Shown piece after piece: positions 1,173 to 43,426 of a stretch of DNA of 64,000 nt. The notes beneath the pieces are model-generated. The model did not search any database and was not told the origin of the DNA. It saw only the letters and a list, made by a program, of their open reading frames with translations. Made by a program: the position numbers and the translations under genes. Location of the stretch: assembly GCF_003918875.1 (NCBI RefSeq), contig NW_025764891.1:2418001-2482000 (forward strand), in the 5' to 3' direction. Source of the DNA: Haliotis rubra (Eukaryota). Position 1 is the stretch's first letter. Each line of letters starts with the position of its first letter.

Positions 1173-4100
1173 TTATATGCCAGTCTGAAGGAAGTTTCTC
1201 GTGCCCAACGGTTTTCTTGTCACCTGAAACAATAAAGGCAAAAATCGGTAAAATGTCATGAAAAGGATCACACATATATATTTCTACAAAAGTTAAGACA
1301 TAAGAATTCTGTTTTATAATTCAGTAGGTATCACCAGATTAAAACTGTCTAACTAGACTTCTGGAATACTGTTTAAAATGAAGTCCTGATTTTCAGTACA
1401 TTCAGATATACAAAAAAGCTACCTAACAAGAAATGTGGTTTCAGCGTGCCTGATGTTTGGATACAAGGACCAAGTTCCTGTTGTTTGGTTTACTTCATGG
1501 ACAGCTATATTCCATCATTGTCATGGGTGACAGCAAACATTTCAACCTTGGCTTGGCACCATATTTGTTGATTTCAAAATGTCCCATTTTAAGGGTACTC
1601 AGTTGATCACAGGGTCTTGCCACCTATCACCATTAGAGTTAGCTCTTTTGGGAATCATTAGGTACTGGGGACCTAGCTCCTACTGAGTATTTAACATGTT
1701 ACAGTGGAATGGACGAAGTTGGATGACAAGTGTTGTAAAAAAGAAGTGAAACATCATTCTCTTCCCACAGAGGTTACTCCTGTCATATCTTCCTACATAA
1801 CCTCTGTTCTAATACGACCCTTTCTTGGTGTCAGCGTTCAAGGCTCGTGATTGGAGACAAGCCGATTTAGTTGTGCAATCAGCGACGTTGTTTCAAAAGT
1901 GATCATTCGCAAGGCCTCGGTAATTTCCGTATGCTTCGGGAAAACTAGAACCTCTTCCCGAGCGCGATGCGCAAACGTTTCTTCTAGACAGAACTCAGTC
2001 ATGTAATGGCGTATCAATGGCGTCTCCATCGCCCTCGTTGACAATGGACAAGCTAGCCATTAAACGTCTTGTGTGTAACATCAACACAATTCCCCGGCAG
2101 ATGGGGGATATTTGTGGCCCCCGCATTTGCTTGTGTTAGTCAAATTGAATCTAAGTCGATGTAACACGTGTTCTGATTGGATAGAAAGAAGGGAGATAAT
2201 TCGTGTTGCGATCTTTTGCCGCTAGGGGATTTTACGAGGACCGGGAAATATGGCCGTATTAGAACAGAGGTTATGTAGGAAGATATGACAGGAGTAACCT
2301 CTGTGGGAAGAGAATGATGAAACATGTAAACAGTGCAATCTTTCACCAACTGTGATGAGTTAGGAGTGCGTATTTCTCTTGAACACATGCATGACTGGAT
2401 ACACACTGTGCCACACGTTATAAGAGGATGCAACGAGGTTTACAGCAATATGATGCCCACCCACACTGCCATGAACCATCCAACAGAAGGTCACTGACAT
2501 ACCCCCAAAACTGCTAAATCAAACCCTGCCCTGCCCTGCCCTGCCCAACAAAAGGTCACAGTGATGCCCCTAAACTGCTCTTACAGCACTTCCCTCCGGA
2601 ACCAAGTAAACTGTACCTCACCCATACAGATCAGTCCACAACCTACAAAACTGCCCTGCCCCAAAACACCCACCCCAACCCCAGAGATCACTGCCAGATC
2701 CCTCCCTAAACTGCCAACACCATCAAACACTGTGCACATGCCAGACAACCACAAACAATTAAAAGAATACAAGAAATACTACCGATGGTTTTTGTGTCGC
2801 CTAGGCTACAAGCACAGAATTGAGAAATGAGATGAGAACCCCCTAGTAGGTTCAGTCTAGGCATCACACACATCCAATAAACAGACATCATGGAGGACAT
2901 GTGGTGAGCTCAACACCTGTCCCAAATTAAAGTAAGTATCTTATCTTCATCTGACAAAATAATAATCATGAAAATAATGACTTATGGGATCTGGATTATG
3001 AATTTTGTTATATTTCAATATATATATATATATGTTGACCATATAAATGAAGCTGACAGACATGTCTTCCAACAAACAGCAAATATAGCACTATATCATT
3101 ATTAACACATGCCAACATAACCAAAACACTATAAAACAAAATCTTTTTTTTCCCACAAACTTTTTTTTCCTTTTCTGTTTTATTTCATCATGTTACAAAG
3201 ACAATAACTATTCACAAAACTGGTGAAACTGGGTATAAACATGTCCTCTAACATAAGGACCAAGTCTCCCTCTAAAGAAGCAGATGTGTGTGGAATTGCC
3301 ATTCCTGGGACCAGATTGACAAATCATTGGTAGCACTACGTGATTCACAAGCCAGAGTTATGATGGATTGAAACGCTAGGAATGTTTTGTGGATGGTGAC
3401 TGTTTAAGATACTGAAACAAAATGATACGATGGTATTCAGTAAGCATTATCGTTTCTGACTTTGTTGTGAGGGAACAGTTTCCTCGGCGTCTTCAGTTTG
3501 ACCATGAACATGGAGACCTTCTTGATGGGTGTTTTAATGAGGGTTTTCCGGTGACCCTCGAACATGTGGATCAGCTTACTCACCTGGCTCTTCTTCTCCT
3601 CTGGCTGCTTCTGAATGAAGCCCGTCTGGCGCTTCATGCCGCGACTCATCCCCTGGTTGTGTACAGGGGAGAAGCCGATGCTAAAGGATACTCTCTCGTC
3701 GGTCAGACTGCAAACAAAAGGATCATCTTTTCAGCAAACAAAACACATCATTTGGGGTTCAGTCAGAATTCCAGCACATTATTATTGTACTATTGAACAT
3801 TTTCTAAGAACCACACCTTTGACTAAAGATAGCTATTTGACAGTAGTCTGTAAATGATACACAAAGAGGCTATTAATGACATCCATCATTTGACAGGATT
3901 GTTTCGTAGTTTAACAGTCGATGACTACATGAACAACATGATGATGTCATTAAGACTTGGAAGTGTGTCGAGGCCACTCAAAGTTGTGGTCCTTTGCAAT
4001 GTTGACATAGTCAAAATATCTCTACTTTGACAAACAATATGACTTCATCCTTCAAAGATCTTAGGGCCCACAAATGAAATCTCAGTACTATGAGGAAAAG

Positions 4101-7100
4101 TTTCTGGTGTGACACATAATTACAATTTGACATAGCAAACTTGTCTGAAGAATTTACATGAAATGATATTAATTAATATTAATTTTATGTTTGACGTAAA
4201 AATATAGTTATATTCTGCCGAAATGTTTAGAGAGTATCATTGTGAATATCTTTTATCCATAACCCTGCAACTCTTTGTCTGCCTACCAGTTTAGCCGGAG
4301 CTTTATTTTCACTATCCCACCGAGGTGAGTGTGCAGTTCGTGGTGACACTCCCTTTGGAGTGCGTCTGAGAGTGCCTCGTGGTGTACGAGAGTTAGACCT
4401 CGACTTCCTCCGGGTGCTGACCGGTGTCTTTGGACTCTGGTTGAGACGTCCGGAGCTCCGCCGTGTCATGGAGTGACCATTGGCCGGTGTTGGTGGACCA
4501 GGACGCTGATACACAGTGCCATACCGAGCCTGGAACCAGACCCACACATTTACCTACTCACACAATTACCTGAGGGCACTGGTCAGTGATACAAACATTA
4601 CCCAACTAGGGCTTGCTTATGATTATAAATCCTATTTAGCTGAGTTGGAGTGAATGAGAGGGTAGGATTTTACATTGTTCTAGCAATACTCCAGCCATAT
4701 CAAAGCATGGAGATACCAGAAATGGTGTCCACACATTTTAACCATATGTGGAATCAACCGGATCCTCGGCGAGACAATCCAAAGCCGTACCCACTAGGCT
4801 ACCCCCCACACAGTAAGAGGAGCAAATGATAAGGAAAACAGGTTAATACCTGGTACCATGTCAACTTTAACTGCAGTGTTATCACAGCTGAATGTAAACA
4901 CTTAAAACGTATTTTCGTCTTGGGACTTCAAGCCAGAAAGGTGTCTCCTGGATCTCCAGTTCCAAGAACTATTACACACATCAACATCAGAAGCTACAAC
5001 AAAGGAAGCTAATCTGTAACTGTGTAATCAAGAAGCTGCAGGTGACTCACATGTTTTCTGTGGTCTTCAGGTAAGGTTTTTGATGGACCGTCATCTACGT
5101 CCATTGTGTTGGGCTTCCTCTTCTTTGAGAGAAAGGAAGCATCGGACACACGCTTGAAGCCATCATCTTCAAACTTCTTGTTTTCACATGACTGGGTCTC
5201 GACCGGGTAGGACGACTTCATGTGAGGTAAACACAGTGTATTCCGTCTCTTCAGCTCACTCAGGCGGTTCCACTCAAAGTCCAGCGGAGGTTCGTCCTCA
5301 CACGAGAACAACTTTCCAGTCCCCACTTAAAGTTTACAGAATACCTCTTTATCAAGACATTTTGTATACTATCAAATTATGTAAGTTAATGCAAACATAT
5401 TCAGTGGTTGTTAACTTCGAGTAGAAGACAGGAAGAGAAGTGTTATGATCTTTATCCATTTGTATCAAAGCCAAAGTCATAGTACTGTTTTGAGATACAG
5501 ATTGCAAAGCAGGCATGGCAAAACAGAGTTCGTTCTGGAGCAGAGCTGTTAATATATACTACCCATCAAAAGTTTAGACTCACTGAAAGCACTCACTATA
5601 TGTTATGTATATGTATGTGGTTACATCGAAGATGAATTTCTCCACCAACTTGGGGAAACCAACTGAAAACCTTATGCAGATGAATTGCACAAGGATGATG
5701 CTTCAAATTGCGAAAGGCATGAGCAAATGTCGTGCATGTGAACAGATGCGTTTTGGTGTAAAGTTTTGTTAAGAATTCGCCAATTTTCACAGATTTTAAT
5801 CATTTACTGAACTCATGACAATAATCTTTTCAATGTTACGAATATGTTTTACAATACACCAGTTCATAACTAAACAGTACCTTTAAACAGTATGGAATAT
5901 TTTGCAAAAAGCTAGTTTAGAACAGTGGACAAGTAAGTGGCTACATTTACACTAGTGAGTCTAAACTTTTGATGGGTAGTATATATAAATCAATCTCATG
6001 ACAAAAAAGTACCCAGGTGAAGGTCCACAATGTACTTACAGGGCAGTCCAAACGCTGTGCCAGTGGAGTTGAGTCTGTCGCTGGAGATGCTGCGGAGGGA
6101 TGCTCGGCTGTTGCTGGAGCGGAGAGACAGGGAGGAGCAGCTCGGAGTGAGGCCAGATGAGGAGTTTGAGGAGCTACGAGGCTAGAGGAGAGGAACATGC
6201 CAAGTCAGTATGGGACAAACTGCGCAGCATGCATGAATAGAAAATCATTTACCATTGGCAGTGTGCAGGTAGTCAGTATTGAAACGACATTAACTTGACA
6301 TGATTGATACATTCAGCATGTACCTGGTCTTTATCTAGTGGTCAATTATCAGCTCAATCTAAAACCTTTAATATCTATTCCATCATCCTGTCTTTAACTA
6401 CTATAATAATCACAACAAACACAGGCTATTACAGCATGATATTAAGACGCTGATTCCAAGCTGTTGTTACCTGGATTGGGAGATGGTGACAAGGGGCTTC
6501 CTATCCAGTGAGCTATGGGAACTGGAGCGAAGGTATTACTTGAGCCCAGCGAGTCATCCAGGATTACAAATTCAGCACTACTCCATCAGTTGTTACCATC
6601 AGCAACTGAGAGATGGTGACAACTCCATCAGGGGCTTGACCCCCTCCTCCATCAGCAACATTCTATCATCAGTGACTCCTATGGCAACATTCAACACTAC
6701 TCCATCAGCAACATTCAACACTACTTGATCAGCAACATTCAACACTACTCCATCAGCGAGTCATCCAGGCTCCCTCCTCAGCAACATTCAGCACTACTCC
6801 ATCAGCAACATTCAATCAGCAACATTCAACACTACTCATCAGCAACACACTCCATCAGCAACATTCAACACTACTCCATCAGCAACATTCACACTCCTCC
6901 ATCAGCAACACTACTCCATCAGAACATTCAAGCAGCAACATTCAACACTACTCCATTCAGCAACATTCAACACAACATTCAACAACTCAAGCAGCAACAT
7001 TCAACACACTCCTCCTTCAGCAACAACATTCAACACTCCTTCAGCAACATTACTCCATCAGCAACATTGAACACTACTCCATCAGCAACATTGCATACTC

Positions 7101-10100
7101 CTCCATCAGCAACATTCAGAACTCCTCCATCAAACACTCAAGTATATGCTATACCATTTTGAAAAGACAATGCCAGTTTAGCAGATCAACAACTTGTCTC
7201 ACCTGTATCACCACCACTGTGGCTGCCGATGTCAATGTTGAGACTGTCGTTGGCGCTGAGCTCCATGTGTCTCTGGAAGGCGTTGGTATCCCCCAGGAGA
7301 GCCGTGCCTGCCTGATCCAGCTGATGTCTATACTCTCGAACTTGGCGGTCAGCAAACTCCAGCTGGTTCTCCAGGGTACGGACTTTGGACGCTGCAAGAA
7401 CCTCTTGATTAGACCACACACGAAACATTGACTAAACCCATTTTTCAGGTGGATGGGTGGTGTTTCTCTACAAACTAAATAACTTTGATGATAAAAACCA
7501 ATCATGACCTAACTCATCAAGTGGCCCCCAATAGTTGATTTGCTCACTGCACAGCAATGAATTAATTTAACAACAATCAACTTCAACAAGTGTTTGCCAC
7601 TAATATGGCAATGTCCCCCGCCGCTAAAGAATGGAATATTCATAACATATTTACTACTTTTTATTTTTTGCTCACATACAAGATGCCTGAAATCACATGT
7701 GTCTGCATAATCCCCCAATGTAGGCTGTCGACATAATTGAAGACATTGGGTACAACAGTTCATGAGATATCACGTTAACAACAGTTTGAAAAGTGGTCAA
7801 AGTGTCGTGGTGACCTTGAAAATAAGGTCAAGGTCACCCAAGTCGACTGGTGTCTGTGTAATCCCCCAATGTAGGCTGTCACCAAATTTGAAGACATTGG
7901 GTACAACAGTTCATGAGATATTGCGTTAACAAGAAATAGGACGGACGTGGACGGACGCCACTGAATACATAGTCCCCCATTCAGCAAGTGAAACAATATT
8001 CACAGCATGTCATAAATGCCAACGAACAACCAAGGTTAAAAACCTGTTACCCAGCCAGGACCCTGTTCCACAAAATGATCTTAGAACTAAGATGCCTAAG
8101 ATGACTAAGAATACTTCAGCACAAAGGGACTTACAACAGACATAGAACTATGGATGCTTCATGGAACAGCCCTGGCCCGAGCATACTTCAATGCCCTGAG
8201 CACTCCATCACAGTGCATGACTCACCCAGTGACTTGGCCTGTGCATTCTCCTCCCTCATCTTACACATGTCTGCGTCCAGTTTCTCAGATCGCTGTCTGT
8301 GTTTCTCGGCCGTGTGTCGCTGTGTCTCCAGAGCCTTGGTCATGGTCTCCATGCTCTCCTTGTACTTGCTGTATTTGTCTTGGTACTGGCGCACCTGTTC
8401 CACCAGCCTCTGATGCTCGTCATTGGACTACAACAGACACAGAACATCATGTTACTACAACATAATGTACCTGGTTTGTGATGTCATACTTGGACAGGAT
8501 CATAAGGGAAATGTGAAGAAACTACAGGAATCAATAGTAATGAACAACTTGCTCAGATACCTAATTAATGCGTCTAAAAAGTAGTTGCTTATATCAGTAC
8601 TAACATCAGCAGAACCTAAACATCTTAATCTGTTTGTTCATTGTTCAGTGCCAAACCCAGCAATATTCAAGCTATAATGTGGCATTATAATATAAGCATG
8701 TCTGTACCAAACAAACATGACTGATATAAGCAGCTGTCCATTCTTTGAGTGCAATAACAGTCACCAACCCAGTATTTAACTTTTTAAATTCAAGGCAACT
8801 CACACTATGAGAAGACTTTTGCAGGTCCATGATCTGAGTCTTATACTTCTCAGCTTGTTTCTGGAGCTTGGCGTTCAGCTCGGATGCCACTGTGATCTCA
8901 TGCTTGTGGTCCCGCACCATCTTCTGCTCACGTTCCATTTGATTCTGCAGCTTCTGTACCAACTCCTTGCACTTCTCCTCGATCTTTGCCTTCTGGCTGC
9001 GGTGCTTCTCATTGTCAGTCTTCAGGTTATGCTCGCGTTCGGTCAGCTCCGACAGACGATGGTCCATCTCATGACACTGACTCTCAAAGTGCTGACATCG
9101 ACTGGCATATTTGCTTATTTCCTGGGCCAGGTCCGACATCTTACTTGCCGTTAGTTCCTAGAAGGAAAAATACATACAGGATATACACAGACATACAAAA
9201 TAAGTTACAGATACAGTGAGTGAGTTGGGTCTTATGCCATTTTTAGCAAAGGAAGACAAACAAGTGGAATGTGGGACCATTTCTTGACGTAGTGAGAGAG
9301 TGAGTGAGATTTTACGACACTTTTAGCAATATTCCAGCAATATCATGGTGGGGGACACAAGAAATGGGCTTCACACACTGTGGCCATGTGGGGAATCGAA
9401 CCTGGGTCTTCAGTGTGACGAGCAAACGCCTTAACCACTAGGCTACACCACCGCCCCTACAGATACAGACTTCATGTTATTATTCCATGTAAAGTATGGT
9501 AAGATAGTTTTTTAAGTTTTAACAAAATAATAATCAAGAGCTAAACAAATTGTTCACAACATGATTAACACTACATATTGTCAATACACCTACAACTAGG
9601 TCACACATTGACTTTCAGGTAGGTCAACTTTAATGAGTGAGGTGACTGGGACCTTGTTTAGCTGGATAAGTCACCATATCAGGTATGTTTATAGCACCAA
9701 GATCTTCACAAGTGAGCAATACCTGAATTTGTGGTTTAGATAAACAGCATGCCAAGTAGTTTAGCAAACAAAGCCAGAATATCATTATGAACCTTGCAGG
9801 ACTATCCGTCACCTCTACTGATCTGAAATAATAGCATCACTCTCCCCTCATCCTCACCTTCTTCTGCTGGAGTATCTCCACCTGGGTCTGCAGGCTGTCC
9901 TTCTCCATCCTGAGAGCTCGGACATCGGCGTCAGTGTGGCGCCGGGCTGAGGACAGCTCTCGCTCATGATGCGCCATCAGTGCCTCCTTCTCCTTGTCCA
10001 CCATCTCCTTCTCCTCCTCCACAGCTGCCAGCTGCAACAGCAACCGCAGAATTGGTCAGACACATTATACTGCTTGAACCTGAAAATGCTTTGAGAAAAT

Positions 10101-13100
10101 ATATATTCTTAGCTATTCAGGTTTTTGTTTAATTAGGTTCCACATACCTGCTGCTTGAGGCTCATCATCTCTGCTTCATAGCGGGAAACAGTTTCCGATG
10201 TGCTCTGTTTGAGAGAATCCTGCAACATCAAGCAAACCAATGATCTTAGAGTCAGTTTGACGTTGAATAGCGCAATCGATTTTTCTTGTCACAGATATAT
10301 CAAAACCATAACAATCAGTAATTCATTTGAAAGGGAATTCATATACAGATTTAAGAATGCAATCACAGCCCTCACCTTTTTAGTTAGCGAGTCTAGTCTT
10401 AAGCCACTTTTAGCAATATTCCAGCAATATCACAGTGGCCTCTTAGTTAGCCATGGATAGATGATGTCAGATGATGTTGAATCGTATCTATGGCCAAACC
10501 ATATGATGTCAGAGTGTCAGCCTGATGTTGAACTACGGTCATTCATTTGAAAGTAAATTACCAGATTAAGAAAACCATCATTGACCTTACCCTTGTAGTG
10601 GAATAATCTGTCTTCAGACTGTGGATCTCGTACTTGAGACAGTTCATCTGTTCTTCATACACTGCCCTCTCCGACTCTAGCTGACAGGCAAACTCAGACT
10701 CAGCTGATTCCAGTTCCTGCTTGAGCTGCATGGCCTTCTGCACAGCTGACATACACGCTCCTCCTGCACCTGTTGCAGCTGCACACTCATTTCCATGACC
10801 TGGGCCTTCAGATCAGTCACTTCACCTCCTGACCCGACTGCTCAGTCTGCTGTTCCTGCTGCAGCAGCTGCTGTCTGACTTCGGCAACATTCTGTTCGTG
10901 CTGTTGCTGCTGCTGTGCAAGCTTGTCCTCATACTCCTGCTGCCTGGTCTCCTGCAAGCTCTCCAGCTCTGCAACCTTTCCCTCCTTCTCCTCAACCACC
11001 TGTGCCATCTTCATCTCATACTCCCTCTGCACAGCAAGGATAGCATCCTCCTTGGCAATTTGCTCCTCAACCATCTTTTCTTCCAACTCTCTGTTCCTCT
11101 CTGTTAAGCAAGTTTCTAGATGTTTTGTCTTTTCTCGGTTTTCATCCAGGTTGCTTTTCATCTCTCGCTGGCTCTGAGCCATCTCCTTCAAGCAGGTATG
11201 CAGATGTGCCAACTTACTCTTGTGATCTTCTTCCATACTGGACACAGCTTGCTCACCCTCTTCTTTCATCTTCAACAGTTTCTCCTCATAATCAGCCTTC
11301 TGTCTCTCCATCATGCCCTTCAAGTCTGAAATGGTCTCCTCAAGCACAGCCTTCTGACTGAGAAGAGACCCTTCATGCTCATCCATCAAAGAAGAAATCT
11401 TATCTTCCTGACGAGTTAGCTCTTCTTTATACTGGTTCTCAAAGCTGGTCTTTCGTTCAGCCATAGCATCATCAAACTCCTCCTGTAGGGTGGACAGTTG
11501 CATGGTCCAGTAGTTTTCACACTCCTGAACCCTACTGTTGTAGTCCTCCTCCAGAGTCTTCTGTCTCTCCTTGAGTTCCTTGATGGTGTCCTCATAGTCT
11601 GTCTGTCTCCCCCGGAATGTGGTGATGCTTTCCTTAGTGGCCATCACAGCACTAGTGGCTGTAGCAATCTGAGATTCATGGCTTCGGATCAATGAGGCTT
11701 TCTCCTCCTCAAAACTCTTTCGAAGTTTCTTCATGTTTTCACTCTGACTTGACTCAAGAACTGCAATCTTCCCCTCAAAGTTATTCTGAAGAAGTGCCAG
11801 TTCTTCCTCTTTTTCATCCTCAATACTTTCAATGACTGTTTTATGTTCCTCCTTTAATGTGTTAACCATTTCTTCATACTGACACAGCTGCTGTTGAAGT
11901 TCAGCAGTTGCAGCCTTACTGTTCTTGACATCAGCTTCACACTTCTCCACCAACACTTTCCGTTCCTCCTCACTGCTCTGAGCCAGCCTCTCCATCTCAA
12001 CAACCTTCTGCTGAAGCTCCTCCACCATCTTCTCCTTCACACAGACTGTGTCCGAGAGGGACTGGATGGTATCAGTTTCAGTCTCCACCTCAGCCCTGAG
12101 AGACTGAAGCTGCTCCATCATCTCATTCTGCTGACTAACCTGCTCTCTCTTCACCTCCTCAAGATTGGCCTCCAAATCTCCGACTTTGCTTTCCAGCAAG
12201 CTTATCTCAGACACAAGGTACTGCTCCCTGGATGTAAACTGCTCCTTTTGAGAGTCCTGGTTTATGGTAGCCTCCTCAACGGTGTGTTCCAGCTGACAGA
12301 TCTTCTCCTGCAGCTCCTTCTCCCGCTGCACATATCCTTCCACTTCAGACTTCAGCTCATGCTTCAGATCCTCTATCTTGTCCTTGAACTCAGCCAGATT
12401 AGAATTAAGTTTCTGTTCCTTCAGCACAAAGTCCCGGGTCTCTCCATCCTTCAGAGAAGCCACCTCCTCCAGCTGCACCTGCATCTCAGCAACTCTGACA
12501 TCCATCTTCTGTTGCAGTGATGCCTGTTCCTGCTGCTTCACCTCAAGCTGCTTCTTCAGATCACCAACTGTTTTTTCCATAGATGTCTCACTTGCCTTCA
12601 GCTGCAGAAGAAGGTCTTCCTTATCCCCACTAACACAGGCAAGCTGTTGCCTCAGATCTTCCTCAGCCTGCTGAGCTTTTGTTGTGATCACATCCATATC
12701 TAGCCTCATTGCCACAAGTTCCTCATCTCTCTCCCTGAGTCGACTCTCACATTGCTGTTGTTCCTCTTGTGCTGAGCAAAGCAGCTGTTCTTTCTCCAAC
12801 AGCATCTTTTGGTGCTGCTCAATGGTAACAGTAAACTGTCTAATGCTTTCAGCATGCTCTGCTAATGTTGAATCTTTTTCAGTAATAGTGTCAAATAATG
12901 TCTTTTTTTCACTCGTCATGTCATTTATTTTTTCTGAAAGGTTAGTAACAAGAGATTCTTTCTCAGCAATTGTCAGTTTGCACTGTTCCATCTCAACTCC
13001 TAACATCTGTATCTGAGACTTTGCCTCAGCCAGGACTGTCTCAGTTTCTGCTATAACACTCTGCTGTGTGTCAACATTAGAGGACAGGGTTTCAACCATA

Positions 13101-30120: not shown

Positions 30121-30925
30121 TGCTGCATCTACAGTCTAAACTGAAAAATGTATGTATGTTAGTTGCATTGGTTTTAATCTTGGGTACGAAACCCCTACAT
30201 CCCTGGGACAATGTGATTGACCTAGTCCGTTAGTTATTTGCAAAGACCAAAAAGCAAAGGGGGTGGTGTTATTTACAGTATACAGTTACACACCTATAAG
30301 ATGCACAGCACTGCCACAAACGTTTCACTTCATTAGGACGCTATCTGGCAATGGTTACACCTATAAGATGCACAGCTATAGCACTGCCAAAAAAGTTACT
30401 TCCAAAATTTACTGAAAAAATCTGTACAAAATCTACAATTATGCATGCACGGCTCCGTGAGTGTTGTGTAGATTCTAGATGAATTACCATCATTAGAAGG
30501 TGCACAAGTACCATATATCACCGAATCATTAACGATTTGACCAATCCGTTCAAATAAAATCGCACATTACTAATGTGTGTTCAAGTGATCCTAACATAGA
30601 TGCCGTGGTTGAACAGGTTCTTTCAAATGTGTTGAATCCTAAATAGTGGTAGATCAAATATATGATCTTAATATTTCATATCGAACAGTCATACAAGACC
30701 AATAGATCTGAGAAGAGGTTTGGCTTCACATTAAGCACGCAAAAATCCAGGTGACCTAGATTGCAATCAAAACAGACACTGAAACCGACATCACTTGTCC
30801 AGCGAAGAATCACGAAATCACACACGTATTCAAACGGCTGTCCACACATATATCCGGACAAAACATTGTAGATAAACGTGCAATTCATAAATTGTAGTTT
30901 ATATTTCATATGGTTAGTTCCTTAC

Positions 30926-31165
30926 CTTAAACTAGCCTCATATTGTTTATCATCGTCAATGTTTATGGAAATTATCACGTCTTCCTATGAGGACAGCGAC
31001 TGACTTCTTTCCTTTGTAACTTCAAATTCAGCGGCTTCAATTTCGGCGAATCCCGTGATAGGACCGGATATCACCGAGGCCGGCTCGCGGGAGGCTTCTC
31101 ATCAGTCGAGTGAACACGAGTGTCGCTCGGCTGTTCCCGGTGGTAAAAGTCGCCAATTTCGAATT
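30926..31165 (-). promoter_or_regulatory. Putative NuMA non-coding first exon and promoter
   Basis: Minus-strand donor AAG|gtaagg at 30926/30925 upstream of the ATG exon (acceptor at 30141-30143). Local CpG-rich patch at about 31030-31160. CHR-like TTTGAA (minus, 31021-31026), CCAAT at 31153-31157 and TTCGAA at 31158-31163. Confidence 0.45.
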
Positions 31166-31394
31166 GTTTTGATCACAAGTACTACTTTACTTACGACTGC
31201 ATTCTTTTAACAGAAGTGTTAATGAACATCAGTTGATTGATGAAAACAAAATGTTAAAAAAACAACTATTCTTTGTTCAAAAATCAGAATCTACAGGATT
31301 TCAAAGTTGATGGAAAACGCTGAAAAACAGAAATATATAAAAATATGTTTGATTGTCAGATGGTAATGTCACGGTTCAATATAGACGAATGTAA

Positions 31395-31874
31395 GGGACC
31401 GTTCATGATTTATGCCTACAGGGTGATGATGATTCTGATGGAGAAGCATGTACAATGTGAATGACCTCCCTAAAAAAATTATGTACAAGGTAAGTGCGCT
31501 CCCCCTCCCTCCCATGTCATGTAAAAATGAACATACGCACACACATGTAGCAGGGCGTGTTGTCATCCCACAGATGACATCCTTACCTTGTCAGCTTGCT
31601 GACAGGGTTAACCTCTTTGAACAAGGCGTCCGACTTCGGATTAGAAGGTCCGTTGTTAGAATCCCAGCACGGGACTCGGAAATTTTATGGCCGCTACACA
31701 CACCCTTTCCCATATTTGTTAAGCATTATTATGTACATAATTGCTGACCCCCCCTAGAGTATGTGTACAAAATTGATCACCCCCTACCTCCCAGAACCAC
31801 GCGCACACACACAGAACCAGACACACACACACACACCCCGACACCCCCAAAAGCCATAAATTATGAATGGTCCC
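31395..31874. mobile_element. PIF/Harbinger-type MITE
   Basis: GGGACCGTTCATGATTTATG ... CATAAATTATGAATGGTCCC with a TAA TSD on both sides. Confidence 0.8.
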
Positions 31875-34721
31875 TAAACATTCTGCTGTCGGCATTTATT
31901 AACAGAAATTTAAATAAGTAGAGTTCATTAAAATGAGGTTTGTGCACTGGTTCCAACTTCTCTTTAAACTTCAACGGTACTAATGTTTCTGTACAAACTG
32001 ATCTAACCTATTATTATAATAATAATAATGATAATAATAGGCCATTTATATAGCGCCTAACCTATTCTTTCCCATTCAAGGGTTTACTTTCCCACATATT
32101 CCAGTTCAAACACAGTGATAAACGGGAAAATGTTCGAACCATGAGCACTCCATCATTGTACTTCAATGTATCCGTATCCTCAGATCAGTTCGGTGCATAT
32201 ACTTGGTCATGTTAATAAACATTCCAGAGAAATTCCTATTAATAATACACGTGACACATTTTAACCGTAATCTATTTTGTGTGTTACAAAGCCACAAGAA
32301 ACAGCTGTAAAATTGAACCAAGTCCTGATGCCATCCATCGTTGATCATATCTGATAACGTCCATGTTAGTTATATAAACGTTTTGTTCATTTCTGCTACG
32401 GGCCGATCTTGTCGACCACGCAAGTCCACGATATGTATATTTGGTTATGTTGTTTTAACCGACGACAAATGAAAAATTGTTTTTCACAAATACATTCTCA
32501 GGTACGAAATATAGATTCGAACCGTTGAAATACATTAAGAGAAATATATAATAATATTGCAACTGGTGCTAAGTCAGTGTTGTTGGAAAAGATTGATACA
32601 GACGAAGTAGGGTCGAAAAATGTTAGATTTGGGTTTATAGTCACAACGAATTTTTTCACCACATTAGAAATCTTAACAACTAAACCCACCCGGCAAGAAA
32701 TATAAACCCAAAACAACACGCGGTTGAGTTACCTCTGAACTCTTCAATGCCTAAATGTCCAAGTCTAATAGGTCTTTAGAAACTAACACCAACTATACTT
32801 CATGTCTGTTCTTTTTCGTGTGGTCTTTGAACATTTTGTTTGTGGTCATTTAATTGGACCTTTAATTTGGACCATTCTGACTCATTTTGACATTTTGTTG
32901 TGTGGCAGTTATTATTTTGGTGTCTTTGGACATTTTAAGTAAGTATATCTGGTTATTTGAGTGTCTATAACCATTCTGACGTGTTCGCCGTTTGATTTTC
33001 TGCCAATGCAGTTGGTATCCATGAAACAGACGTTTGTATATCGGATCTGACACATGACTTTGCCGTCGTTTAGTATGTACATGATTTTAGTACAGTGTGC
33101 TCAACATCATGATTGCCGCAATAAAATATTATTTACCTTATATTTACAAATACAACGTATTTTGGGGTATTTTTCCAATTTAATTTATTTTCAGCCATTT
33201 TACAATATTGCACAGATTCCACATAGTTTCTTGACAGTAGGGGTATATAAATTCAAGGTTTGGTAGGTCAGAATCGTTTTTGTTTTAAAGAGATGTTCCA
33301 TACCAGCTGGTATCGGCAATAAAGCAATTATTATTCAACCGACTGTTGCAAACTTTTCGACTTTAGTGATCAGAAATATTGCAAATATATCTGTTGATTA
33401 CAGTTTTGATTACAGTTTCGGCTTTGATATGTCTATAGATAATACTAATTGTGGGTATGCAAATGTTCTCCCTGTGATATGTTATCTATTGTTTCATATA
33501 TTCGTATACTTGACATGAGAGAATCAAAGTGTTGTACACATTCCCTGATGATTCGAACGGGAAATCTTTATGGTCATGTTCATCATAGGAAACTATACAA
33601 AACAGTGATCTATACCATATGTAAACCATAGTATACGCATTTTGTTATCAGCTTGTTATCGGGTTCTGGACGATGGAAGGTCGTGAAATATGTAATAAGG
33701 TGTAAAGAAATAGTATACCACTGTTTTTAAGTTAAAGCTCTCAACAGCGGAAATGCGCTCCCTACGTATTTTGAATGATTGAACAGCGCTGTAGAGGAGC
33801 ATTGGCAGTGTTTCCAAAAATAACTTCAGCTTCAACTCTTTCAGCCGTTGTCCCCAGTAACCAACATGGCTGGAGGTTGAGAGTACGGTTGAAAGAGATT
33901 TAGCCCAACATATCCTGCGCCATCTCTTGAAATAACACCTCTATGTTGAAGATGTCGGGGACAAGGTACTCATGAGCCCATTTTCGGTGATTTTGGTTAA
34001 AAGCTCCTAATTTTGGTGATGACTTACGCGTATATTCATTTTCAAATTTTGAAGTTTGCCATGAGTTCACAGTCTCATTGTTCAAATCCTTTCTTGACAG
34101 GTGGTACAGGGCATGTCGTATTTGACTTTGACACCTCCTTTAAGTCGGCTATTTTTGGCCTAATGGCAAACGTATAACCGAATGCATAAATCCAAAGCCG
34201 AAGACGCCTGGTATTTCATTTTAGACACTAGAAACATTTTTTGTGTGTTTTGTTTTCAAAACTGGCTGGCTTGGGAATAGGTATTTCCTGTATGGTACCA
34301 TGAAAGTAAACATGATTCCAATGTGAAAAGTTACCTCTTTTAGCCTATATAGGTGCCCCTGGTCAATTACATCTTTTGTTCAAAAAAATACATTTTATTT
34401 TTAAAAAAAATATTCAGGTCATGTTGACATATGTAAGCCCAGGGGGGAGGAAGGGGGCATCAACGGACAGGTTGCGATAACAACTTATTTGGGAACTTCT
34501 TTTATTAACCACTTTATCATTAATATCAATGTTTCAGTGGTTAGATTTTCAACATTTTTGTGATGGTCGGCAGTCATAATATTCAAGAGTTAAATTGAGG
34601 ATTTTGAAAAATAGTGGATGGGGTTGCACATTATACCCACGTCAAGATTTACCTGCAACACACCCTTGGATCCTCTAGTGATGTTAATTTCTGTCAAGTA
34701 AAATTCTTAATCTCTTGACCA

Positions 34722-34790
34722 CTCTCTCTCTCTCTCTCTATCTCGCTCTTCCTCCTCTCTCTTCCTCCTCTCCCTCTCTCTCTCTCTCTC
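34722..34790. repeat. (CT)n-rich microsatellite
   Basis: Interrupted CT/CCT run visible directly. Confidence 0.9.
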
Positions 34791-35310
34791 CAACAGCTTT
34801 CTGTCACAAAACGACCCGATGATTTTTATGAAAGCATAAAAATCACCGCCTGACGTCAACCGTTTTCAGTCCATGCCATATCGGCTCATTCCACAACACA
34901 CAGTAACTTGTAGATTACGGAATGGTACGAGTGTGCCAAATGGCATCGGAGCCTTTCTGCAATTGTCCGTAAATCACAAGACACCAAATCTATTGTCCAT
35001 GACCTATTCAACTCTTTATGTTCATTTCCGTAACATCACAGAAATGACTAGATAAATTTGCACATTGTGTAACAGTGTGGACATAGCTTAGTCGGTTAGC
35101 TGTCGGGGTAACAATCCGAAGGTCATGGATTTGTGTCCGACGGATTCTGAAAAACTGGTTGTTTGTCTTAGTGACATGTGACCTACGTCAGAGAATGTCC
35201 TCACGAGAGGTTGTGGTGTGCTGAATTCTGAAGGTGCTCCTACATTTTTAACATTTTGTGTGTCCAGGCTAACTCATCAGTTTGCATGTATGTCATTTGT
35301 TTTCTCGCAG

Positions 35311-37036
35311 CGTTGTGCCGTACTCTCCTCGACAGAAGAAAGCCACCACCCTTGCAGCCATTGACACAAGTAACGACAGTGTACCTCCATTAGATTTCTC
35401 CTTCTACAAACTGGCAAGTGTACAAGGCAAGTGTCTTAATTGATTCTCAGCCAACATTGTGTTCTGTCACTCTACATTGTACTGAAAATGATGTCTAGAA
35501 TCAAGTTACACACCAATTGTTACAGTTTCATGTTAATATTTTCACATTTTGCTAAACATGAACAATCGTTTTTTGTGTGGTCAATTCAGATGTTTATGAT
35601 GAGGAACCCCGTGCTGTAACCTGCAAGAAGGGTGAGTCAAGTCCCCGTGTGAGTAAAGAGAACAAGTCCAAGGCGCAGTGTCTCCGCCTCAACAACAACC
35701 AGCTGTCTGACATCAAGCTGCTGTTGGAGGTGACAGAAAGCCTGTTCACCAACCCTGGGGCTCTCGGCTGGATTGACTTATCTTTCAATGATCTTACTGT
35801 TATAGATCCTGTAAGTATTGGGTGTTATACAAGGGTAGATACACCCTCTGTCTTCAGTTGCATTGTATATCTATGTCTATCAGCATAAATGTTCTGGACC
35901 CATTCAGAAATTTCTCTTCCAGTGGTAGGAGAGATGGTGATGAAGCTATGTGATGAATGCTTGAATTTTGCTTAGTATGGCTTTTAATAAATAATTTAAA
36001 CCATTTTAAGATTAAAAAATACAAGCATGGAATAAGTTTGACAGTGTGGATTTTTCCAATAACAAACATTAACAAGGAATCTTTTGGATTTGTAACATAT
36101 TTGAAATTATGCATGATATCCCTGCATTTGGATAATTGGGGCGAACAAAAGACATCTTAGTTGATTTTCATTTACTTCTAGGTACTAACAGAGTTTGAGA
36201 ATTTAGAAATCCTGTATCTCCATGGCAACAATATAGCAAAGATCCAGGAGGTGGACAAACTGCAGAGTTTAAGAAGCTTGCGTAAACTGACTCTGCATGG
36301 CAACCCTGTCGAGGAGTTCAAGGTGAGTGAAATCTCAGCTGCACCACTTGTCAGACTGATCCAAACACCATATATGTGGTTAATCTATGCCTGACTTGCC
36401 TGAAAAACATAAATCACTTTCAGTTGTCAAAAGACAACTGTAGAATTTAATACTCCTTCATTATGTTTTGAGTAGTAGTTAAATAACTTATATACAACTT
36501 TATGGAATATATATAACTTTATATGAGTGTAAACATCAAGAGCAGAACAAATCCAGCTGACTGCAGTGTATTGTTATTCTCTTGTTTATATTTTGCTCAT
36601 GCTCAAGACAAGGTCTGAAGTTGGTTGTTCAGTGTACCATATTTTAAGAGTGAGTGAGTTTAGATTTACACTGCTTTTAGCAATACTCCAGCAATATCAC
36701 GGCAGGGGACACCAGAAATGGGCTTCACACATTGTGCACATGTAGGCCATATTTTAAGAAGAAATGCAGTCCACACAATCTCCTGAAAACATGTGGTGTT
36801 TGTTTGATTATGGCTGTGCAGTAATGTGGTATTTAACTCAGATAGTGTCATGTTGTATATGCTGACACAATTGCTGTCCATTTCAGGGTTACAAGCAATA
36901 CATCCTGTCTCTTATGCCCTGGCTCCTGGGACTTGACTTCTTCCGCATAACCAAAGCCGACCTGAAAACTGCTGAGACCTGGAACAAAATGAGCAACAAG
37001 GGCAAGCCGAAAAAGAAGTCAGATGCTGAAGATTAA
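35311..37036 (+). CDS. LRRC51: Leucine-rich repeat-containing protein 51; start-codon exon not located
   Basis: Exons 35311-35426 (..VPPLDFSFYKLASVQ, GC donor), 35590-35810 (DVYDEEPR..LRLNNNQL..LGWIDLSFNDLTVIDP), 36182-36322 (VLTEFENLEILYLHGNNI..LRKLTLHGNPVEEFK), 36887-37036 (GYKQYILSL..TKADLKTAETW..AED*). Collinear with recalled LRRC51 motifs PPLDYSF, EEPR, WIDLSFNDLTSIDPVL, LYLHGN, LTLHGNP, GYRQYV, TKADRTTAEVW. Confidence 0.9.
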
Positions 37037-40279: not shown

Positions 40280-40782
40280 CTACCCACTTCAGATGTTAAA
40301 GATGGAGAAGGATGGAGTATGGACGCTTCTTGTGCCCTGGAATCACCACAGACGTACATAATGTGGCCCTCGTGACAAACCACAGGTGAAGATAACTGAT
40401 GTTAATCTCATAATACTTGTAGGCTGTGACAAATGTCTGAACACTCAGAACAGTTTCAACCATCTTCTTCAGGAGCTCAGTTCTTATCCTGCAGATACAA
40501 CTTCCACTGTCCTGAAGGAGGGACGGAACAACTCTACCCAGGCTGTATAGCCTTGTGACTAAAATCCACATTTCAATCTGAAATCAGAATTAAAATGTGA
40601 TTAACTATTTTCAAGACAGAAAATTGACACTGTCAAACATTGTACAGTCATAAGAAAAATACAACTGCAATATGAGATGGCTTATCATACAGTGAGACAC
40701 ACACTTGTTCACTTGTCTGAGTGAACTTTCTAGACTACTTGGTCGTTGTTTTCTCCTTTACACTATCGCTTGTTTGATATGA

Positions 40783-40948
40783 CTGACTGACTGAGTTTAG
40801 TTTTACGCCGCTTTTAGCAATATTCCAGCAATATCACGGCGGGGGACACCAGAAATGGGCTTAACACATTGTGCCCATGTGGGGAATCGAACCCGGGTCT
40901 TCGGCGTGACGAGCCAACGCTTTAACCACTAGGCTACCCCACCGCCCC
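40783..40948 (-). mobile_element. Family A SINE, (AGTC)n tail
   Basis: TSD cttgtttgatatga at 40769-40782 and 40949-40962. Confidence 0.9.
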
Positions 40949-41034
40949 CTTGTTTGATATGAGCTACAGATTAGTTGGATATGACCCCACGGTGTCCACA
41001 CTTGTTAAAATAATAATAGAAATTAAGGGAATCT

Positions 41035-41246
41035 GGTTTGGTTTGTTGCACTCTGCTATATAGTGGTGGTCTGTAAATAATCGTGTCTGGACCAGACAAT
41101 CCAGTGATCAACACCATGAGCATCAATCTTCACAATTGGGATATGTGTCAACCAAGACAGCAAGTCTGACCACCTGATCACGTTAGTCGCCTCTTACAAC
41201 AAGCATGAGTTAATGAACACCAATTCTAACCCGAATCTTCATGGGT
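41035..41246 (-). mobile_element. Family B element, diverged
   Basis: Homologous to 18656-18933. Confidence 0.8.
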
Positions 41247-41436
41247 GTAAGGGACATTGAGTCTTAGGGGGTTGATGGTAAAATGTTCCATAATTTTATT
41301 CCAACTACTTACTAAACAAAGACATATAACATAATGGGCAATGACAGCGAAATCATTCAATTCTACATTTCTAGGATTGAATAGAAATTTGTATGAAAAT
41401 ACACATCAGTAATTTCAGAGTTATAGAAGTACATAT

Positions 41437-43426
41437 CTACAAATCATTTGCTTTGTCACACATACATGTGCTTGCATCATCAGCTGAATCCCTGTCATCC
41501 ATCATGTCGGTGTCCATGCCATCATCGTTGGTGTCACTGTCATCATCATCATCACCCTCGTCATCCTCTTCTTCGTCATCGTCATCATCTAGATGCTACA
41601 AGTGACACCTTCCATATATTATGATACATGGAAACAAAACAATCAATGCAGTATTCAACAATGAAATTAAGATATTCAAACAAACTTTATTCTGTAAAAT
41701 CAATTTAATGACACTGAGTGAGTTTGGGTACACACAGCTTTCAACAATATTCCAGCAATATGACAGTCAAATCTGCTCTTCATTTTGGGCCTAGGAGTAT
41801 CAAACCAGATGAGTGATCTCTTGAACTACTTGGCTAAGTCGCTGTCCGTTAGTTTGAGTACTCTCTACATGCTGTTACACTACAGCAAGCCGAGTTAAAA
41901 TTTATCATCATATTGGCAGTATGTCTGCCATCTAGTGACGGGCGATTACATTAGATTATTTTCCATAATAATATTCCTTTTTGGAGGCATAGAAATCAGA
42001 CAATTTGTACAAAGAGTTTGCAAGGGTTGATACGGAATGGCTGATTAGAAAGTTCACCTGACAGTGACATGACCTCTTGGAGGTCCTCAGATCTTCATGC
42101 ATATGTGCAAGAAGATAACAGTTCTACACATCCTATCATAAACTGCAAAATACCCACCTCTGACGTCTTTCCTATTGGCACAATGTTGTTGTCTTTGTCA
42201 GCTATACTTTGATGCTAAAAAGTTAAAAACAGCGCATGGTAACAAGAGCGGAGTGGAGTGCGTGTGTGAAGTGAGTGAGTGAGAGAGACATCTGGTACAG
42301 ATACTTTGAAATTCAGCAATAGACCATCATCAATACTTCAGTTTTGAATGCACTTGATTCCTTTCTCATCGAAGACTATATACAGCCTTTTGCAGTTTAT
42401 TCACTATTTGTAACCAACAAATCAAGCCACATCCTAGTGTCAGCAAAAGGTATATATATCATGGATTTATATTAAATATTCATTATATCAACTCATTAAA
42501 AGAGATGATATATCAAACCAATATCCCAAAGTTCTGCACCCAAAAATAGCACAACACCAATTTCAGTCAAAATCAAATTTGTTGCCATGGAAAAGCAAAA
42601 AGTATTTTATTCAGATATCCAAAACTACCAAAAGGCACCAGTTCACCAACAGACATATCTTTGTGCCAAGTTTGGTGAAGAAATATTGAACGTTTGTTTA
42701 TATTGTGCCATACTCTGATGAATTTGCACGGAGTGCCGGACGCACGGACGGAGTCCATTATAATTGCTTATTGATTTATTAGCTGATGCTCTACCTATGG
42801 ACCACAAAAGCAATCAGTGCATTGTTAGTCAAAATATTCATTGTTACGGGCAGATGTCTTTCCGAATACACTACTCAACACAGTGAGTGAGTTTAGTTTT
42901 ACGCTGCTTTCAGCAATATTGCAGCAATGTCACAGCAGGAGACACCAGAAATGAGCTTCACACATTGTACCCATGTAGTGAATCGTGCCCTAACTTAAAT
43001 TTTGGACTTTTAATCCTTTTGTGAGTTCTCTAGTTATTGTTGTGTTAAGTTTTGTTTATAATTCTAGAATATTTATACATATTATTTGGGATGGAGGAGC
43101 GGGAGGAACTCTTACCGACGAGCGTACGATTTAACCACTCAGCCACCCCAGCGACCTTACTTAACAAAGTGACAGCTCAGCTACAAAATCCTTGAATCCT
43201 TTGAGCAATCGAAAACACTAATTGTCTAATGTTAATAATATTGTTATGTGATCAAGTTATGCACTCTTGGTCTGAAGTGTGTCCATAAGTACATCGAACC
43301 CACCCATGACTGGTATTCTTCTTCTAATTTTGACAGTTCATTTTCATCATCACATGGCTTATCAACAGTGAACCATAACTTGTCAACTTCTCTCGGAGCA
43401 AGAGATGGGAACAAGGGAGCAGACAT
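41437..43426 (-). CDS. ANAPC15: Anaphase-promoting complex subunit 15
   Basis: Exons 43426-43304 (MSAPLFPSLAPREVDKLWFTVDKPCDDENELSKLEEEYQSW), 42214-42158 (HQSIADKDNNIVPIGKTSE), and from 41595 (HLDDDDDEEEDDEGDDDD.. acidic tail). Matches recalled APC15 (LFPSLFPR..LWF.LDRPC..W LQSIAEKDNNLVPIGK, then D/E tract). The 3' end is uncertain: read-through stop at 41437-41439, or splicing to an acceptor at about 40578. Confidence 0.9.

What the first reader, a model, noticed from the sequence alone, without database searches (positions are those of the whole stretch)
1173..43426. NUMA1(-) / LRRC51(+) / ANAPC15(-): same order and orientation as human 11q13.4
Seen: three adjacent genes identified from their translations, with NuMA and LRRC51 divergent and LRRC51 and ANAPC15 convergent. 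Established knowledge (recalled): in human, NUMA1 is head-to-head with LRRC51/LRTOMT, followed by LAMTOR1 and ANAPC15 on the opposite strand. Inference: this block dates to at least the bilaterian ancestor, and two mitotic regulators flanking one LRR gene may be held together by shared regulation. I found no LAMTOR1 or TOMT exons between 37036 and 41437, so those were gained or lost separately.
Basis: partly seen in the sequence, partly recalled or inferred. Interest (0 to 1): 0.72.

Follow-up and report, generated by a model that had tools for sequence, protein, structure and literature searches.

The report
Abalone NuMA–LRRC51–ANAPC15 conserved gene neighbourhood
In this abalone DNA the genes for NuMA, the cilia protein LRRC51 and ANAPC15 lie side by side much as in humans; the NuMA–LRRC51 head-to-head pair is truly ancient, but this is one more case of a known phenomenon and shared regulation is not shown.

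Summary
The window is Haliotis rubra (100% identical to GCA_003918875.1 QXJH01000001.1). It carries NuMA (-, CDS 1173-30120), LRRC51 (+, CDS 33943-37036) and ANAPC15 (-, to 43426). All three identities hold:
- NuMA: its C-terminal exon retrieves NuMA orthologues from cnidarians to mammals.
- LRRC51: the annotated product matches solved LRRC51 (9FQR) at 1.6e-50; the next hit scores 63 bits.
- ANAPC15: Pfam PF15243 at 56 bits.

No LAMTOR1 or TOMT is in the window.

The NuMA/LRRC51 5'-5' pair also occurs in the acorn worm Ptychodera flava and the crinoid Anneissia japonica. Papers list NUMA1 next to LRTOMT in human. An origin in the bilaterian ancestor is therefore well supported. The pair is broken in the scallop Argopecten, the nemertean Tubulanus and the sea slug Elysia crispata.

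ANAPC15 next to LRRC51 was seen only in abalone, and in vertebrates with LAMTOR1 between. In Nematostella, LAMTOR1 sits head-to-head with NuMA, so LAMTOR1 was probably lost from the abalone block rather than gained in vertebrates.

"Shared regulation of two mitotic genes" is unsupported. LRRC51 is an axonemal protein with an X-box-like motif at its 5' end. The transcribed ends seen for NuMA and LRRC51 are about 2.9 kb apart. ANAPC15 itself sits 273 bp from SDAD1.

This is a new member of a known kind, conserved ancestral microsynteny.

The parts
1173..30140 (-). NuMA orthologue, coding region (stop 1173-1175, ATG 30120). More than 25 exons with large introns. The public annotation gives a 1958-aa product.
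   Evidence: Collinear tblastn to Sinanodonta, Argopecten, Aplysia, Biomphalaria and Elysia NuMA. Gene range from the annotated record.
30926..31008 (-). NuMA 5'UTR exon. It is the furthest upstream transcribed piece seen, and the contig ends there.
   Evidence: RNA contig joint 30140->30926 with CT..AC ends, in run X2 only.
27920..30140 (-). NuMA N-terminal hook-domain exons: 30083-30140, 29599-29683, about 29311-29390, about 28634-28765 and 27920-28105.
   Evidence: tblastn to the N-termini of mollusc NuMA proteins, which reach the Pfam PF21670 cut-off. Joint 29683->30083 in three RNA runs. Exon 29602-29685 alone scores 14.7 bits to PF21670.
10820..14923 (-). NuMA giant coiled-coil exon (open frame of 1368 aa). 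It includes 16 tandem copies of a 63-bp (21-aa) unit at 13419-14435.
   Evidence: 0% Pro; E+Q+L+K make up 55%.
5069..5323 (-). NuMA C-terminal exon with the LGN/Pins-binding peptide and the adjoining NuMA/LIN-5/Mud-type motif.
   Evidence: The top two PDB hits are NuMA peptides 6hc2_B and 3ro2_B. There are 184 hits in the 1.84-billion-protein library, and the named ones include NuMA from Nematostella to mammals. Alignment A2.
1176..4532 (-). NuMA basic C-terminal tail exons: about 4281-4532, about 3494-3697 and 1176-1226.
   Evidence: tblastn to the C-termini of mollusc NuMA proteins.
31009..33864 (.). Spacer between the outermost transcribed ends seen for NuMA and LRRC51 (2,856 bp). It holds a highly represented repeat at about 31422-31850.
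   Evidence: tables 2 and 8.
33847..33861 (+). X-box-like (RFX-type) motif with one mismatch to the consensus, just upstream of the LRRC51 5' end.
   Evidence: The same half-sites lie 5 bp upstream of the Elysia crispata LRRC51 CDS (L015 9982-9996). Sites with at most one mismatch occur at 0.23 per kb in the window.
33865..37036 (+). LRRC51 orthologue. Coding exons 33943-33963, 35309-35425, 35589-35813, 36182-36322 and about 36884-37036. Product P0250, 216 aa.
   Evidence: Joint 33963->35309 (GT..AG) in four RNA runs. PDB 9fqr_H3 LRRC51 at E 1.6e-50. Exon-by-exon match to mouse Lrrc51.
40573..43426 (-). ANAPC15 orthologue. ATG at 43426; exon frames 43247-43438, 42098-42214 and 41440-41595 (acidic tail with an in-frame stop at 41437-41439). 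The public annotation's CDS range runs on to a short terminal exon ending at 40573.
   Evidence: Pfam PF15243 at 56.1 bits (cut-off 27). Human APC15 chains at E 2e-10..
43700..64000 (+). SDAD1 orthologue, head-to-head with ANAPC15 (ATGs 273 bp apart). It is not part of the human 11q13.4 block.
   Evidence: Annotated neighbour with the SDA1 Pfam families..

Best explanation
The window is a stretch of the blacklip abalone (Haliotis rubra) genome.

The NuMA-LRRC51 head-to-head (5'-5') pair is inherited from at least the bilaterian ancestor. This makes it a conserved ancestral microsyntenic pair.

ANAPC15 in abalone and vertebrates, and LAMTOR1 in vertebrates and Nematostella, are most likely remnants of the same old neighbourhood. 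Abalone has lost LAMTOR1 from this place, and TOMT was never seen here.

The block persists in slowly rearranging genomes and has been broken in others. Retention is best explained by low rearrangement rates, perhaps with some 5'-5' regulatory entanglement of NuMA and LRRC51. Co-regulation of 'mitotic' genes does not explain it.

Shown: the gene identities, their positions, and the pair's recurrence in two other phyla.
Inferred: the ancestral state, the history of LAMTOR1 and ANAPC15, and the cause of retention.
For: Gene identities:
- NuMA.
- LRRC51.
- ANAPC15.

Species and annotation: locus L009 is 100% identical to the window and is annotated NuMA-like(-), LRRC51(+), ANAPC15(-), SDAD1(+).

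The same 5'-5' NuMA/LRRC51 pair in other phyla:
- Ptychodera flava.
- Anneissia japonica.
- In both, all four tested LRRC51 exon pieces match.

Other neighbours:
- Nematostella: LAMTOR1 head-to-head with NuMA.
- Mus caroli: LRRC51(+)/LAMTOR1(-).
- Human lists: PMC3561653 gives '...IL18BP, NUMA1, LRTOMT, FOLR3...'; PMC4657880 and PMC8884108.

Expression: both genes appear as spliced RNA contigs in the same RNA runs, LRRC51 in all four and NuMA in three.
Against: - The pair is absent within 10 kb in Argopecten irradians, where a zf-C2H2 gene lies upstream of NuMA.
- It is absent in Tubulanus polymorphus, where a WGG gene lies upstream.
- It is absent in Elysia crispata, where LRRC51 faces ALG6/8.
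- ANAPC15 was not found near LRRC51 in Elysia, Anneissia, Ptychodera (only 2.2 kb of flank seen) or any of 67 metagenome loci.
- Only 10-kb flanks could be seen, and only about ten species were sampled.
- The human strands rest on recall.
- The supplement of Irimia et al. 2012 could not be read, so prior listing of the pair is unknown.
Confidence: 0.75

Rival explanations
1. NuMA, LRRC51 and ANAPC15 are held together because they share regulatory input, for example a bidirectional NuMA/LRRC51 promoter or a common cell-cycle enhancer. Breaks are then selected against.
For: - The 5'-5' orientation is conserved in three invertebrate phyla.
- Conserved microsyntenic pairs are enriched for 5'-5' orientation and co-expression (PMC3514665).
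- Both genes appear as spliced contigs in the same RNA runs.
Against: - The outermost transcribed ends seen are 2,856 bp apart with a repeat between them. This is not the <1 kb signature of a bidirectional promoter.
- An X-box-like site sits at its own 5' end. That is a different programme from a mitotic gene.
- ANAPC15 is convergent to LRRC51 and shares its 273-bp upstream region with SDAD1.
- The pair is broken in three lineages.
- Contigs cannot measure co-expression.
Confidence: 0.15
2. Only NuMA-LRRC51 is ancestral. ANAPC15 came to lie beside LRRC51 in the abalone lineage independently of its position in vertebrates. This could be chance within a shared ancestral linkage group.
For: - ANAPC15 was not detected next to LRRC51 in Elysia crispata (10 kb downstream).
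- It was not detected in Anneissia, where the neighbour is PhyH, or in any metagenome locus.
- In vertebrates LAMTOR1 lies between them.
- In abalone ANAPC15 is tightly paired with SDAD1, which by recall lies on another human chromosome.
Against: - Being within two genes of LRRC51 in both abalone and vertebrates is improbable by chance. The rough figure is 4 in 20,000 genome-wide, or below 1% even within one linkage group (inference).
- LAMTOR1 beside NuMA in Nematostella shows that the wider neighbourhood is old.
Confidence: 0.35
3. An artefact: misassembly, or misidentified coiled-coil and LRR genes, so that the resemblance to 11q13.4 is spurious.
For: - Generic coiled-coil and LRR proteins are easily mis-called.
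- The first word search with the coiled-coil exon was blank.
- The matching public locus is the same assembly as the window, so it is not independent.
Against: - Specific non-coiled-coil NuMA motifs are present.
- LRRC51 scores 174.6 bits against 63.3 for the next LRR protein.
- ANAPC15 is above the Pfam cut-off.
- Independent genomes of two other phyla show the same pair.
- RNA contigs confirm the splice joints at both 5' ends.
Confidence: 0.02

Closest known systems
Human 11q13.4 segment NUMA1 - LRTOMT (LRRC51 + TOMT) - LAMTOR1 - ANAPC15
   Same: The same three orthologues are in the same relative order. NuMA and LRRC51 are adjacent (PMC3561653). LRRC51 is convergent with the next gene downstream (Mus caroli).
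   Different: - Abalone lacks LAMTOR1 and TOMT at this place.
- ANAPC15 is followed by SDAD1 rather than the FOLR genes.
- LRRC51 is not fused into a dual-reading-frame LRTOMT locus (PMC5462536).
Conserved ancestral microsyntenic pairs (CAMPs; Irimia et al. 2012, PMC3514665), e.g. HSPE1-HSPD1
   Same: These are non-paralogous neighbours kept across bilaterian phyla, in the 5'-5' orientation that is over-represented among such pairs.
   Different: - HSPE1-HSPD1 share a <1 kb bidirectional promoter and a common function.
- Here the ends seen are about 2.9 kb apart and the functions differ (spindle-pole dynein adaptor versus axonemal docking protein).
- Whether this pair is in the published list could not be checked, because the supplement is not held.
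Nematostella vectensis LAMTOR1-NuMA head-to-head pair (L010)
   Same: NuMA is paired 5'-5' with a small gene that belongs to the human 11q13.4 cluster.
   Different: The partner is LAMTOR1, not LRRC51. No LRRC51 or ANAPC15 was detected within the 39-kb locus.

Membership tests
NuMA (NUMA1 / Mud / LIN-5 family) | C-terminal LGN/Pins-binding peptide followed by the conserved NuMA-LIN-5-Mud type motif | tested here: met
   - For exon 5012-5326(-), the top two PDB hits are NuMA peptides, with weak E-values of 0.08-0.09 because the solved chains are short.
- There are 184 library hits at E<=1e-3. Many of the named full-length ones are called NuMA, from Nematostella to mammals, and the rest carry generic or coiled-coil names.
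- The 12-species alignment has invariant R, E, RN, H, Y and E columns.
NuMA (NUMA1 / Mud / LIN-5 family) | N-terminal hook domain (Pfam PF21670 HOOK_N_NuMA) | tested here: inconclusive
   - The exons were searched one by one. Only 29602-29685 hits PF21670, at 14.7 bits against a cut-off of 27.
- The exons are collinear with the N-termini of mollusc orthologues.
- Those orthologues do reach the cut-off, at 54, 34.5 and 30.2 bits.
NuMA (NUMA1 / Mud / LIN-5 family) | Very long central coiled coil | tested here: met
   - The 1368-aa exon has no proline, and E+Q+L+K make up 55%.
- The neighbouring coiled-coil exons give only weak matches to coiled-coil Pfam families; the 1368-aa exon itself matched no Pfam family.
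NuMA (NUMA1 / Mud / LIN-5 family) | Basic S/T-P-rich C-terminal tail (microtubule-binding region in vertebrates) | tested here: met
   - Exons at about 4281-4532, about 3494-3697 and 1176-1226 match the tails and the terminal motif of mollusc NuMA proteins.
- Microtubule binding itself is not testable here.
LRRC51 | Best and clearly separated match to LRRC51 among all LRR proteins | tested here: met
   - P0250, the annotated product of 33943-37036, matches 9fqr_H3 LRRC51 at E 1.6e-50 and 174.6 bits over residues 31-210. The next hit scores 63.3 bits.
- Exon 35589-35813 alone gives E 8e-11, and LRRC51 is its only hit.
- The profile search returns proteins named LRRC51.
LRRC51 | Conserved gene structure and N-terminal PPLD[FY]SF motif | tested here: met
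   - The four conserved coding exons match mouse, crinoid, acorn-worm and sea-slug LRRC51 exon for exon.
- Alignment A3.
ANAPC15 | Pfam PF15243 above the curated cut-off | tested here: met
   Exon 1 scores 56.1 bits against a cut-off of 27. Exon 2 continues the same profile, positions 41-58.
ANAPC15 | N-terminal segment as in human APC15 of solved APC/C structures, plus an acidic tail | tested here: met
   - E 2e-10 to 8tar_D, 5g04_D and 4ui9_D.
- The D/E-rich third exon lies at 41440-41595.
Conserved ancestral microsyntenic pair (NuMA-LRRC51) | Adjacency of the orthologues in several distant bilaterian lineages, with orientation kept | tested here: met
   - 5'-5' adjacency in Haliotis, Ptychodera and Anneissia.
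- Human adjacency comes from the literature.
- The pair is broken in Argopecten, Tubulanus and Elysia.
Conserved ancestral microsyntenic pair (LRRC51-ANAPC15) | Adjacency in several distant lineages | tested here: inconclusive
   - The two are directly adjacent only in Haliotis.
- In vertebrates LAMTOR1 lies between them.
- ANAPC15 was not found in Elysia, Anneissia or the metagenome loci.
Bidirectional-promoter gene pair | Transcription starts less than about 1 kb apart | tested here: inconclusive
   - The outermost RNA-contig ends are at 31008 (NuMA) and 33865 (LRRC51), which are 2,856 bp apart.
- Contigs cannot show true starts.

The most novel reading that the evidence does not exclude
The NuMA-LRRC51 5'-5' pair has been kept for more than 550 million years because the two genes share or compete for one regulatory region. 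NuMA is a cytoplasmic-dynein adaptor of the mitotic spindle. LRRC51 is a docking factor for an axonemal inner dynein arm. The shared region would couple the choice between cell division and motile ciliogenesis. LAMTOR1 and ANAPC15 would be further members of a pre-bilaterian neighbourhood.
Probability: 0.1. Interest if true: 0.6.

Novelty: new member of a known kind. Interest (0 to 1): 0.33.

Why it matters
The result gives a clean, checkable example of deep microsynteny. A 5'-5' pair of unrelated genes, a spindle-pole dynein adaptor and an axonemal dynein-docking protein, is kept in molluscs, echinoderms, hemichordates and vertebrates. A cnidarian hint suggests that LAMTOR1 belonged to the same neighbourhood.

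It helps with orthology assignment of fast-evolving coiled-coil NuMA genes in invertebrates. Several of these are annotated as 'golgin', 'COP1-interactive' or 'leucine-rich repeat DDB_G0290503' proteins. It also adds a marker for ancestral linkage studies.

It does not by itself reveal a new mechanism.

Tried and rejected
1. A word search with the 1368-aa coiled-coil exon was blank. The likely cause is that full-length relatives exceed the length window and coiled-coil words swamp the candidate list.
2. Pfam on single NuMA exons gave only noise or sub-threshold hits.
3. A PDB search with hook exon 28544-28768 gave no hit.
4. Two look-ups were wasted on shorter isoforms that are not on record.
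5. The ENA metagenome contigs L001 and L002 carry LRRC51 but no ANAPC15 or NuMA in 20 kb. L001 gives the same match statistics as Elysia crispata L015, so it adds no new lineage.
6. A scan of JGI metagenome contigs with an LRRC51 alignment found 67 loci. None was mammal-like, and none carried ANAPC15 or NuMA pieces. Most are short and of unknown origin.
7. Earlier findings of the scan held nothing relevant.
8. The supplement of Irimia et al. 2012 is not held, so prior listing of the pair could not be checked.
Exons were searched one by one by reference, and database proteins (P0250 and the NuMA orthologues) were used for full-length comparisons.
10. The window has no N runs. A human protein that appeared in one hit list was not used.


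Full report
**What the window is.** The window has no N runs and about 40% G+C, with long introns and many short open frames, as expected for an animal genome. A look-up of a homologous LRRC51 protein returned locus L009, from Haliotis rubra GCA_003918875.1, contig QXJH01000001.1. All tested exon pieces match L009 at 100% identity. Window position equals L009 position plus 23,942. The public gene calls there are a 1958-aa gene (-), LRRC51-like of 216 aa (+), ANAPC15 of 104 aa (-) and SDAD1 (+).

**ANAPC15.**
- Exon 1 (frame 43247-43438, ATG at 43426) scores 56.1 bits to Pfam PF15243, where the cut-off is 27.
- Exon 2 continues the same profile.
- Exon 1 matches human APC15 chains of solved APC/C structures at E 2e-10.
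- An acidic third exon (41440-41595) ends at a stop at 41437-41439.
- The public CDS range instead runs on to a short, unconserved terminal exon ending at 40573.

**LRRC51.**
- The annotated product P0250 maps to five coding exons: 33943-33963, 35309-35425, 35589-35813, 36182-36322 and about 36884-37036.
- Against all solved structures, P0250 hits chain 9fqr_H3, 'Leucine-rich repeat-containing protein 51', at E 1.6e-50 (174.6 bits) over almost its whole length. The next LRR protein scores 63.3 bits.
- Exon 35589-35813 alone finds only that chain, at E 8e-11.
- The four conserved exons match mouse Lrrc51 exon by exon.
- A profile search returns proteins named LRRC51 from mammals, reptiles and gastropods.
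[quoted passage not shown] It binds the doublet microtubule under inner dynein arm f.
- PMC4634137 lists Lrrc51 among putative RFX targets.

So the 'LRR gene' between the two mitotic genes is an axonemal gene.

**NuMA.**
- The 1368-aa exon (10820-14923) is proline-free, and E+Q+L+K make up 55% of it. It matches no Pfam family.
- A word search with it was blank. The protein is probably longer than the search's length window allows.
- The decisive piece is the C-terminal exon 5012-5326. Its two best PDB hits are the LGN-binding peptides of NuMA, 6hc2_B and 3ro2_B, at a weak E of about 0.08 because those chains are short.
- In the 1.84-billion-protein library it has 184 hits at E<=1e-3.
- The long named hits include NuMA of Aplysia, Elysia, Sinanodonta, Anneissia, Nematostella, shark, seahorse, coelacanth, toad and marsupial. 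In each the motif lies 150-550 residues before the C-terminus.
- A 12-species alignment shows the conserved core from cnidarian to mammal.
- Mollusc NuMA proteins align collinearly along the gene, from 30120 to 1176. This includes the conserved terminal motif just before the stop at 1173-1175.
- Their N-termini reach the Pfam PF21670 (HOOK_N_NuMA) cut-off.
- The abalone hook exons, searched singly, are too short. The best is 14.7 bits, for 29602-29685.

**The 5' ends.** Contigs of four runs were laid on 29550-35450. The runs are labelled RNA only by a guess, but their contigs carry canonical splice joints.
- LRRC51 exon 1 is joined to exon 2 (33963->35309, GT..AG) in all four runs, and the contigs reach 33865.
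- NuMA exon 2 is joined to exon 1 (29683->30083) in three runs.
- NuMA exon 1 is joined to a 5'UTR exon (30140->30926) in one run, and that contig ends at 31008.
- The two genes are therefore divergent, with at most 2,856 bp between the transcribed ends seen. A highly represented repeat (about 31422-31850) lies in that spacer.
- Contigs cannot give true starts or expression levels.

**Absence of LAMTOR1 and TOMT.**
- tblastx with the LAMTOR1 gene regions of Nematostella and Mus caroli found nothing in the 64 kb at E<=0.1. The two regions find each other at 4.7e-10.
- A primate LRTOMT-type protein with the O-methyltransferase domain matches only through its LRRC51 part. This search had no positive control.

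| Species | What lies beside NuMA or LRRC51 |
|---|---|
| Ptychodera flava (hemichordate) | 200-aa LRR gene head-to-head with NuMA; all four LRRC51 exon pieces match |
| Anneissia japonica (crinoid) | LRRC51 head-to-head with NuMA; NuMA there carries PF21670; a PhyH gene lies beyond LRRC51 |
| Nematostella vectensis | LAMTOR1 head-to-head with NuMA; no LRRC51 or ANAPC15 in 39 kb |
| Mus caroli | LRRC51(+) convergent with LAMTOR1(-) |
| Argopecten irradians (scallop) | zf-C2H2 gene upstream of NuMA; no LRRC51 |
| Tubulanus polymorphus (nemertean) | WGG gene upstream of NuMA |
| Elysia crispata (sea slug) | LRRC51 faces ALG6/8; no ANAPC15 in 10 kb downstream |
| 67 metagenome loci with LRRC51 | no ANAPC15 or NuMA piece |

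Papers place NUMA1 next to LRTOMT in the human gene order (PMC3561653). They place LAMTOR1 and ANAPC15 within 100 kb (PMC8884108 and PMC4657880). Chicken has the four genes in one 1-Mb window (PMC10976558).

**Reading.**
- By inference, a single shared adjacent pair between two genomes is expected by chance about twice genome-wide. The same pair in the same 5'-5' orientation in a mollusc, a hemichordate, an echinoderm and vertebrates is not chance. The pair therefore dates at least to the bilaterian ancestor.
- ANAPC15's place is probably, but not certainly, a remnant of the same neighbourhood.
- The Nematostella LAMTOR1-NuMA pair argues that LAMTOR1 was an old member that left this place in the abalone lineage.
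- The proposal of shared regulation of mitotic genes is not supported.
  - The middle gene is ciliary.
  - An X-box-like site sits at its 5' end (33847-33861). The same half-sites lie 5 bp before the Elysia LRRC51 CDS. Such sites occur at 0.23 per kb, so this is suggestive only.
  - ANAPC15's tight partner is SDAD1, 273 bp away.
  - The pair has been broken at least three times.
- Conserved 5'-5' pairs are a described class (PMC3514665). Whether this pair is in that paper's list could not be checked.

**Verdict.** This is a new member of a known kind, of modest interest.

Noticed in passing
window 43426-43700: ANAPC15 (-) and SDAD1 (+) are head-to-head with start codons only 273 bp apart. This looks more like a bidirectional promoter than the NuMA/LRRC51 spacer does. 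The pairing is not part of the human 11q13.4 block.
   Followed up: partly
window 48218-54356 and 57158-64000: A tandem duplication of about 9 kb at 87-94% identity includes SDAD1-like exons. It is either a real partial gene duplication or collapsed and expanded haplotypes in the assembly.
   Followed up: partly
window 13419-14435: There are 16 tandem copies of a 63-bp (21-aa) unit inside the NuMA coiled-coil exon, with 85% matches. This is a lineage-specific lengthening of the rod.
   Followed up: partly
window 33847-33861; L015 9982-9996: An X-box-like (RFX-type) motif with identical half-sites lies just upstream of LRRC51 in both Haliotis and Elysia crispata. This fits LRRC51 being an axonemal gene and a putative RFX target in mouse.
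   Followed up: partly
window 31422-31850: A short repeat in the NuMA/LRRC51 spacer lies in many RNA contigs at about 100-fold word depth. The contigs run on into unrelated sequence on both sides. It is probably a transcribed interspersed repeat.
   Followed up: no
window 40573-41439: The public ANAPC15 CDS range ends at a TGA at 40573, after a 19-codon unconserved open frame. The conserved acidic exon has its own in-frame stop at 41437. These may be alternative 3' ends or an annotation quirk.
   Followed up: no
L010 6644-10001 (Nematostella vectensis): LAMTOR1 (PF15454) lies head-to-head with NuMA. LAMTOR1 is a member of the human 11q13.4 cluster that is missing from the abalone block.
   Followed up: partly
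L014 8619-18454 (Tubulanus polymorphus): NuMA appears split into two gene models: a 184-aa HOOK_N_NuMA product and a 1977-aa rest. Several invertebrate NuMA orthologues carry misleading names such as golgin A4-like, COP1-interactive protein and LRR protein DDB_G0290503.
   Followed up: no
window 24790-25332 (-), inside a NuMA intron: An open frame of 181 aa looks by eye like a Tc1/mariner-type transposase remnant. Pfam gave no hit at E<=1, so this is unconfirmed.
   Followed up: no
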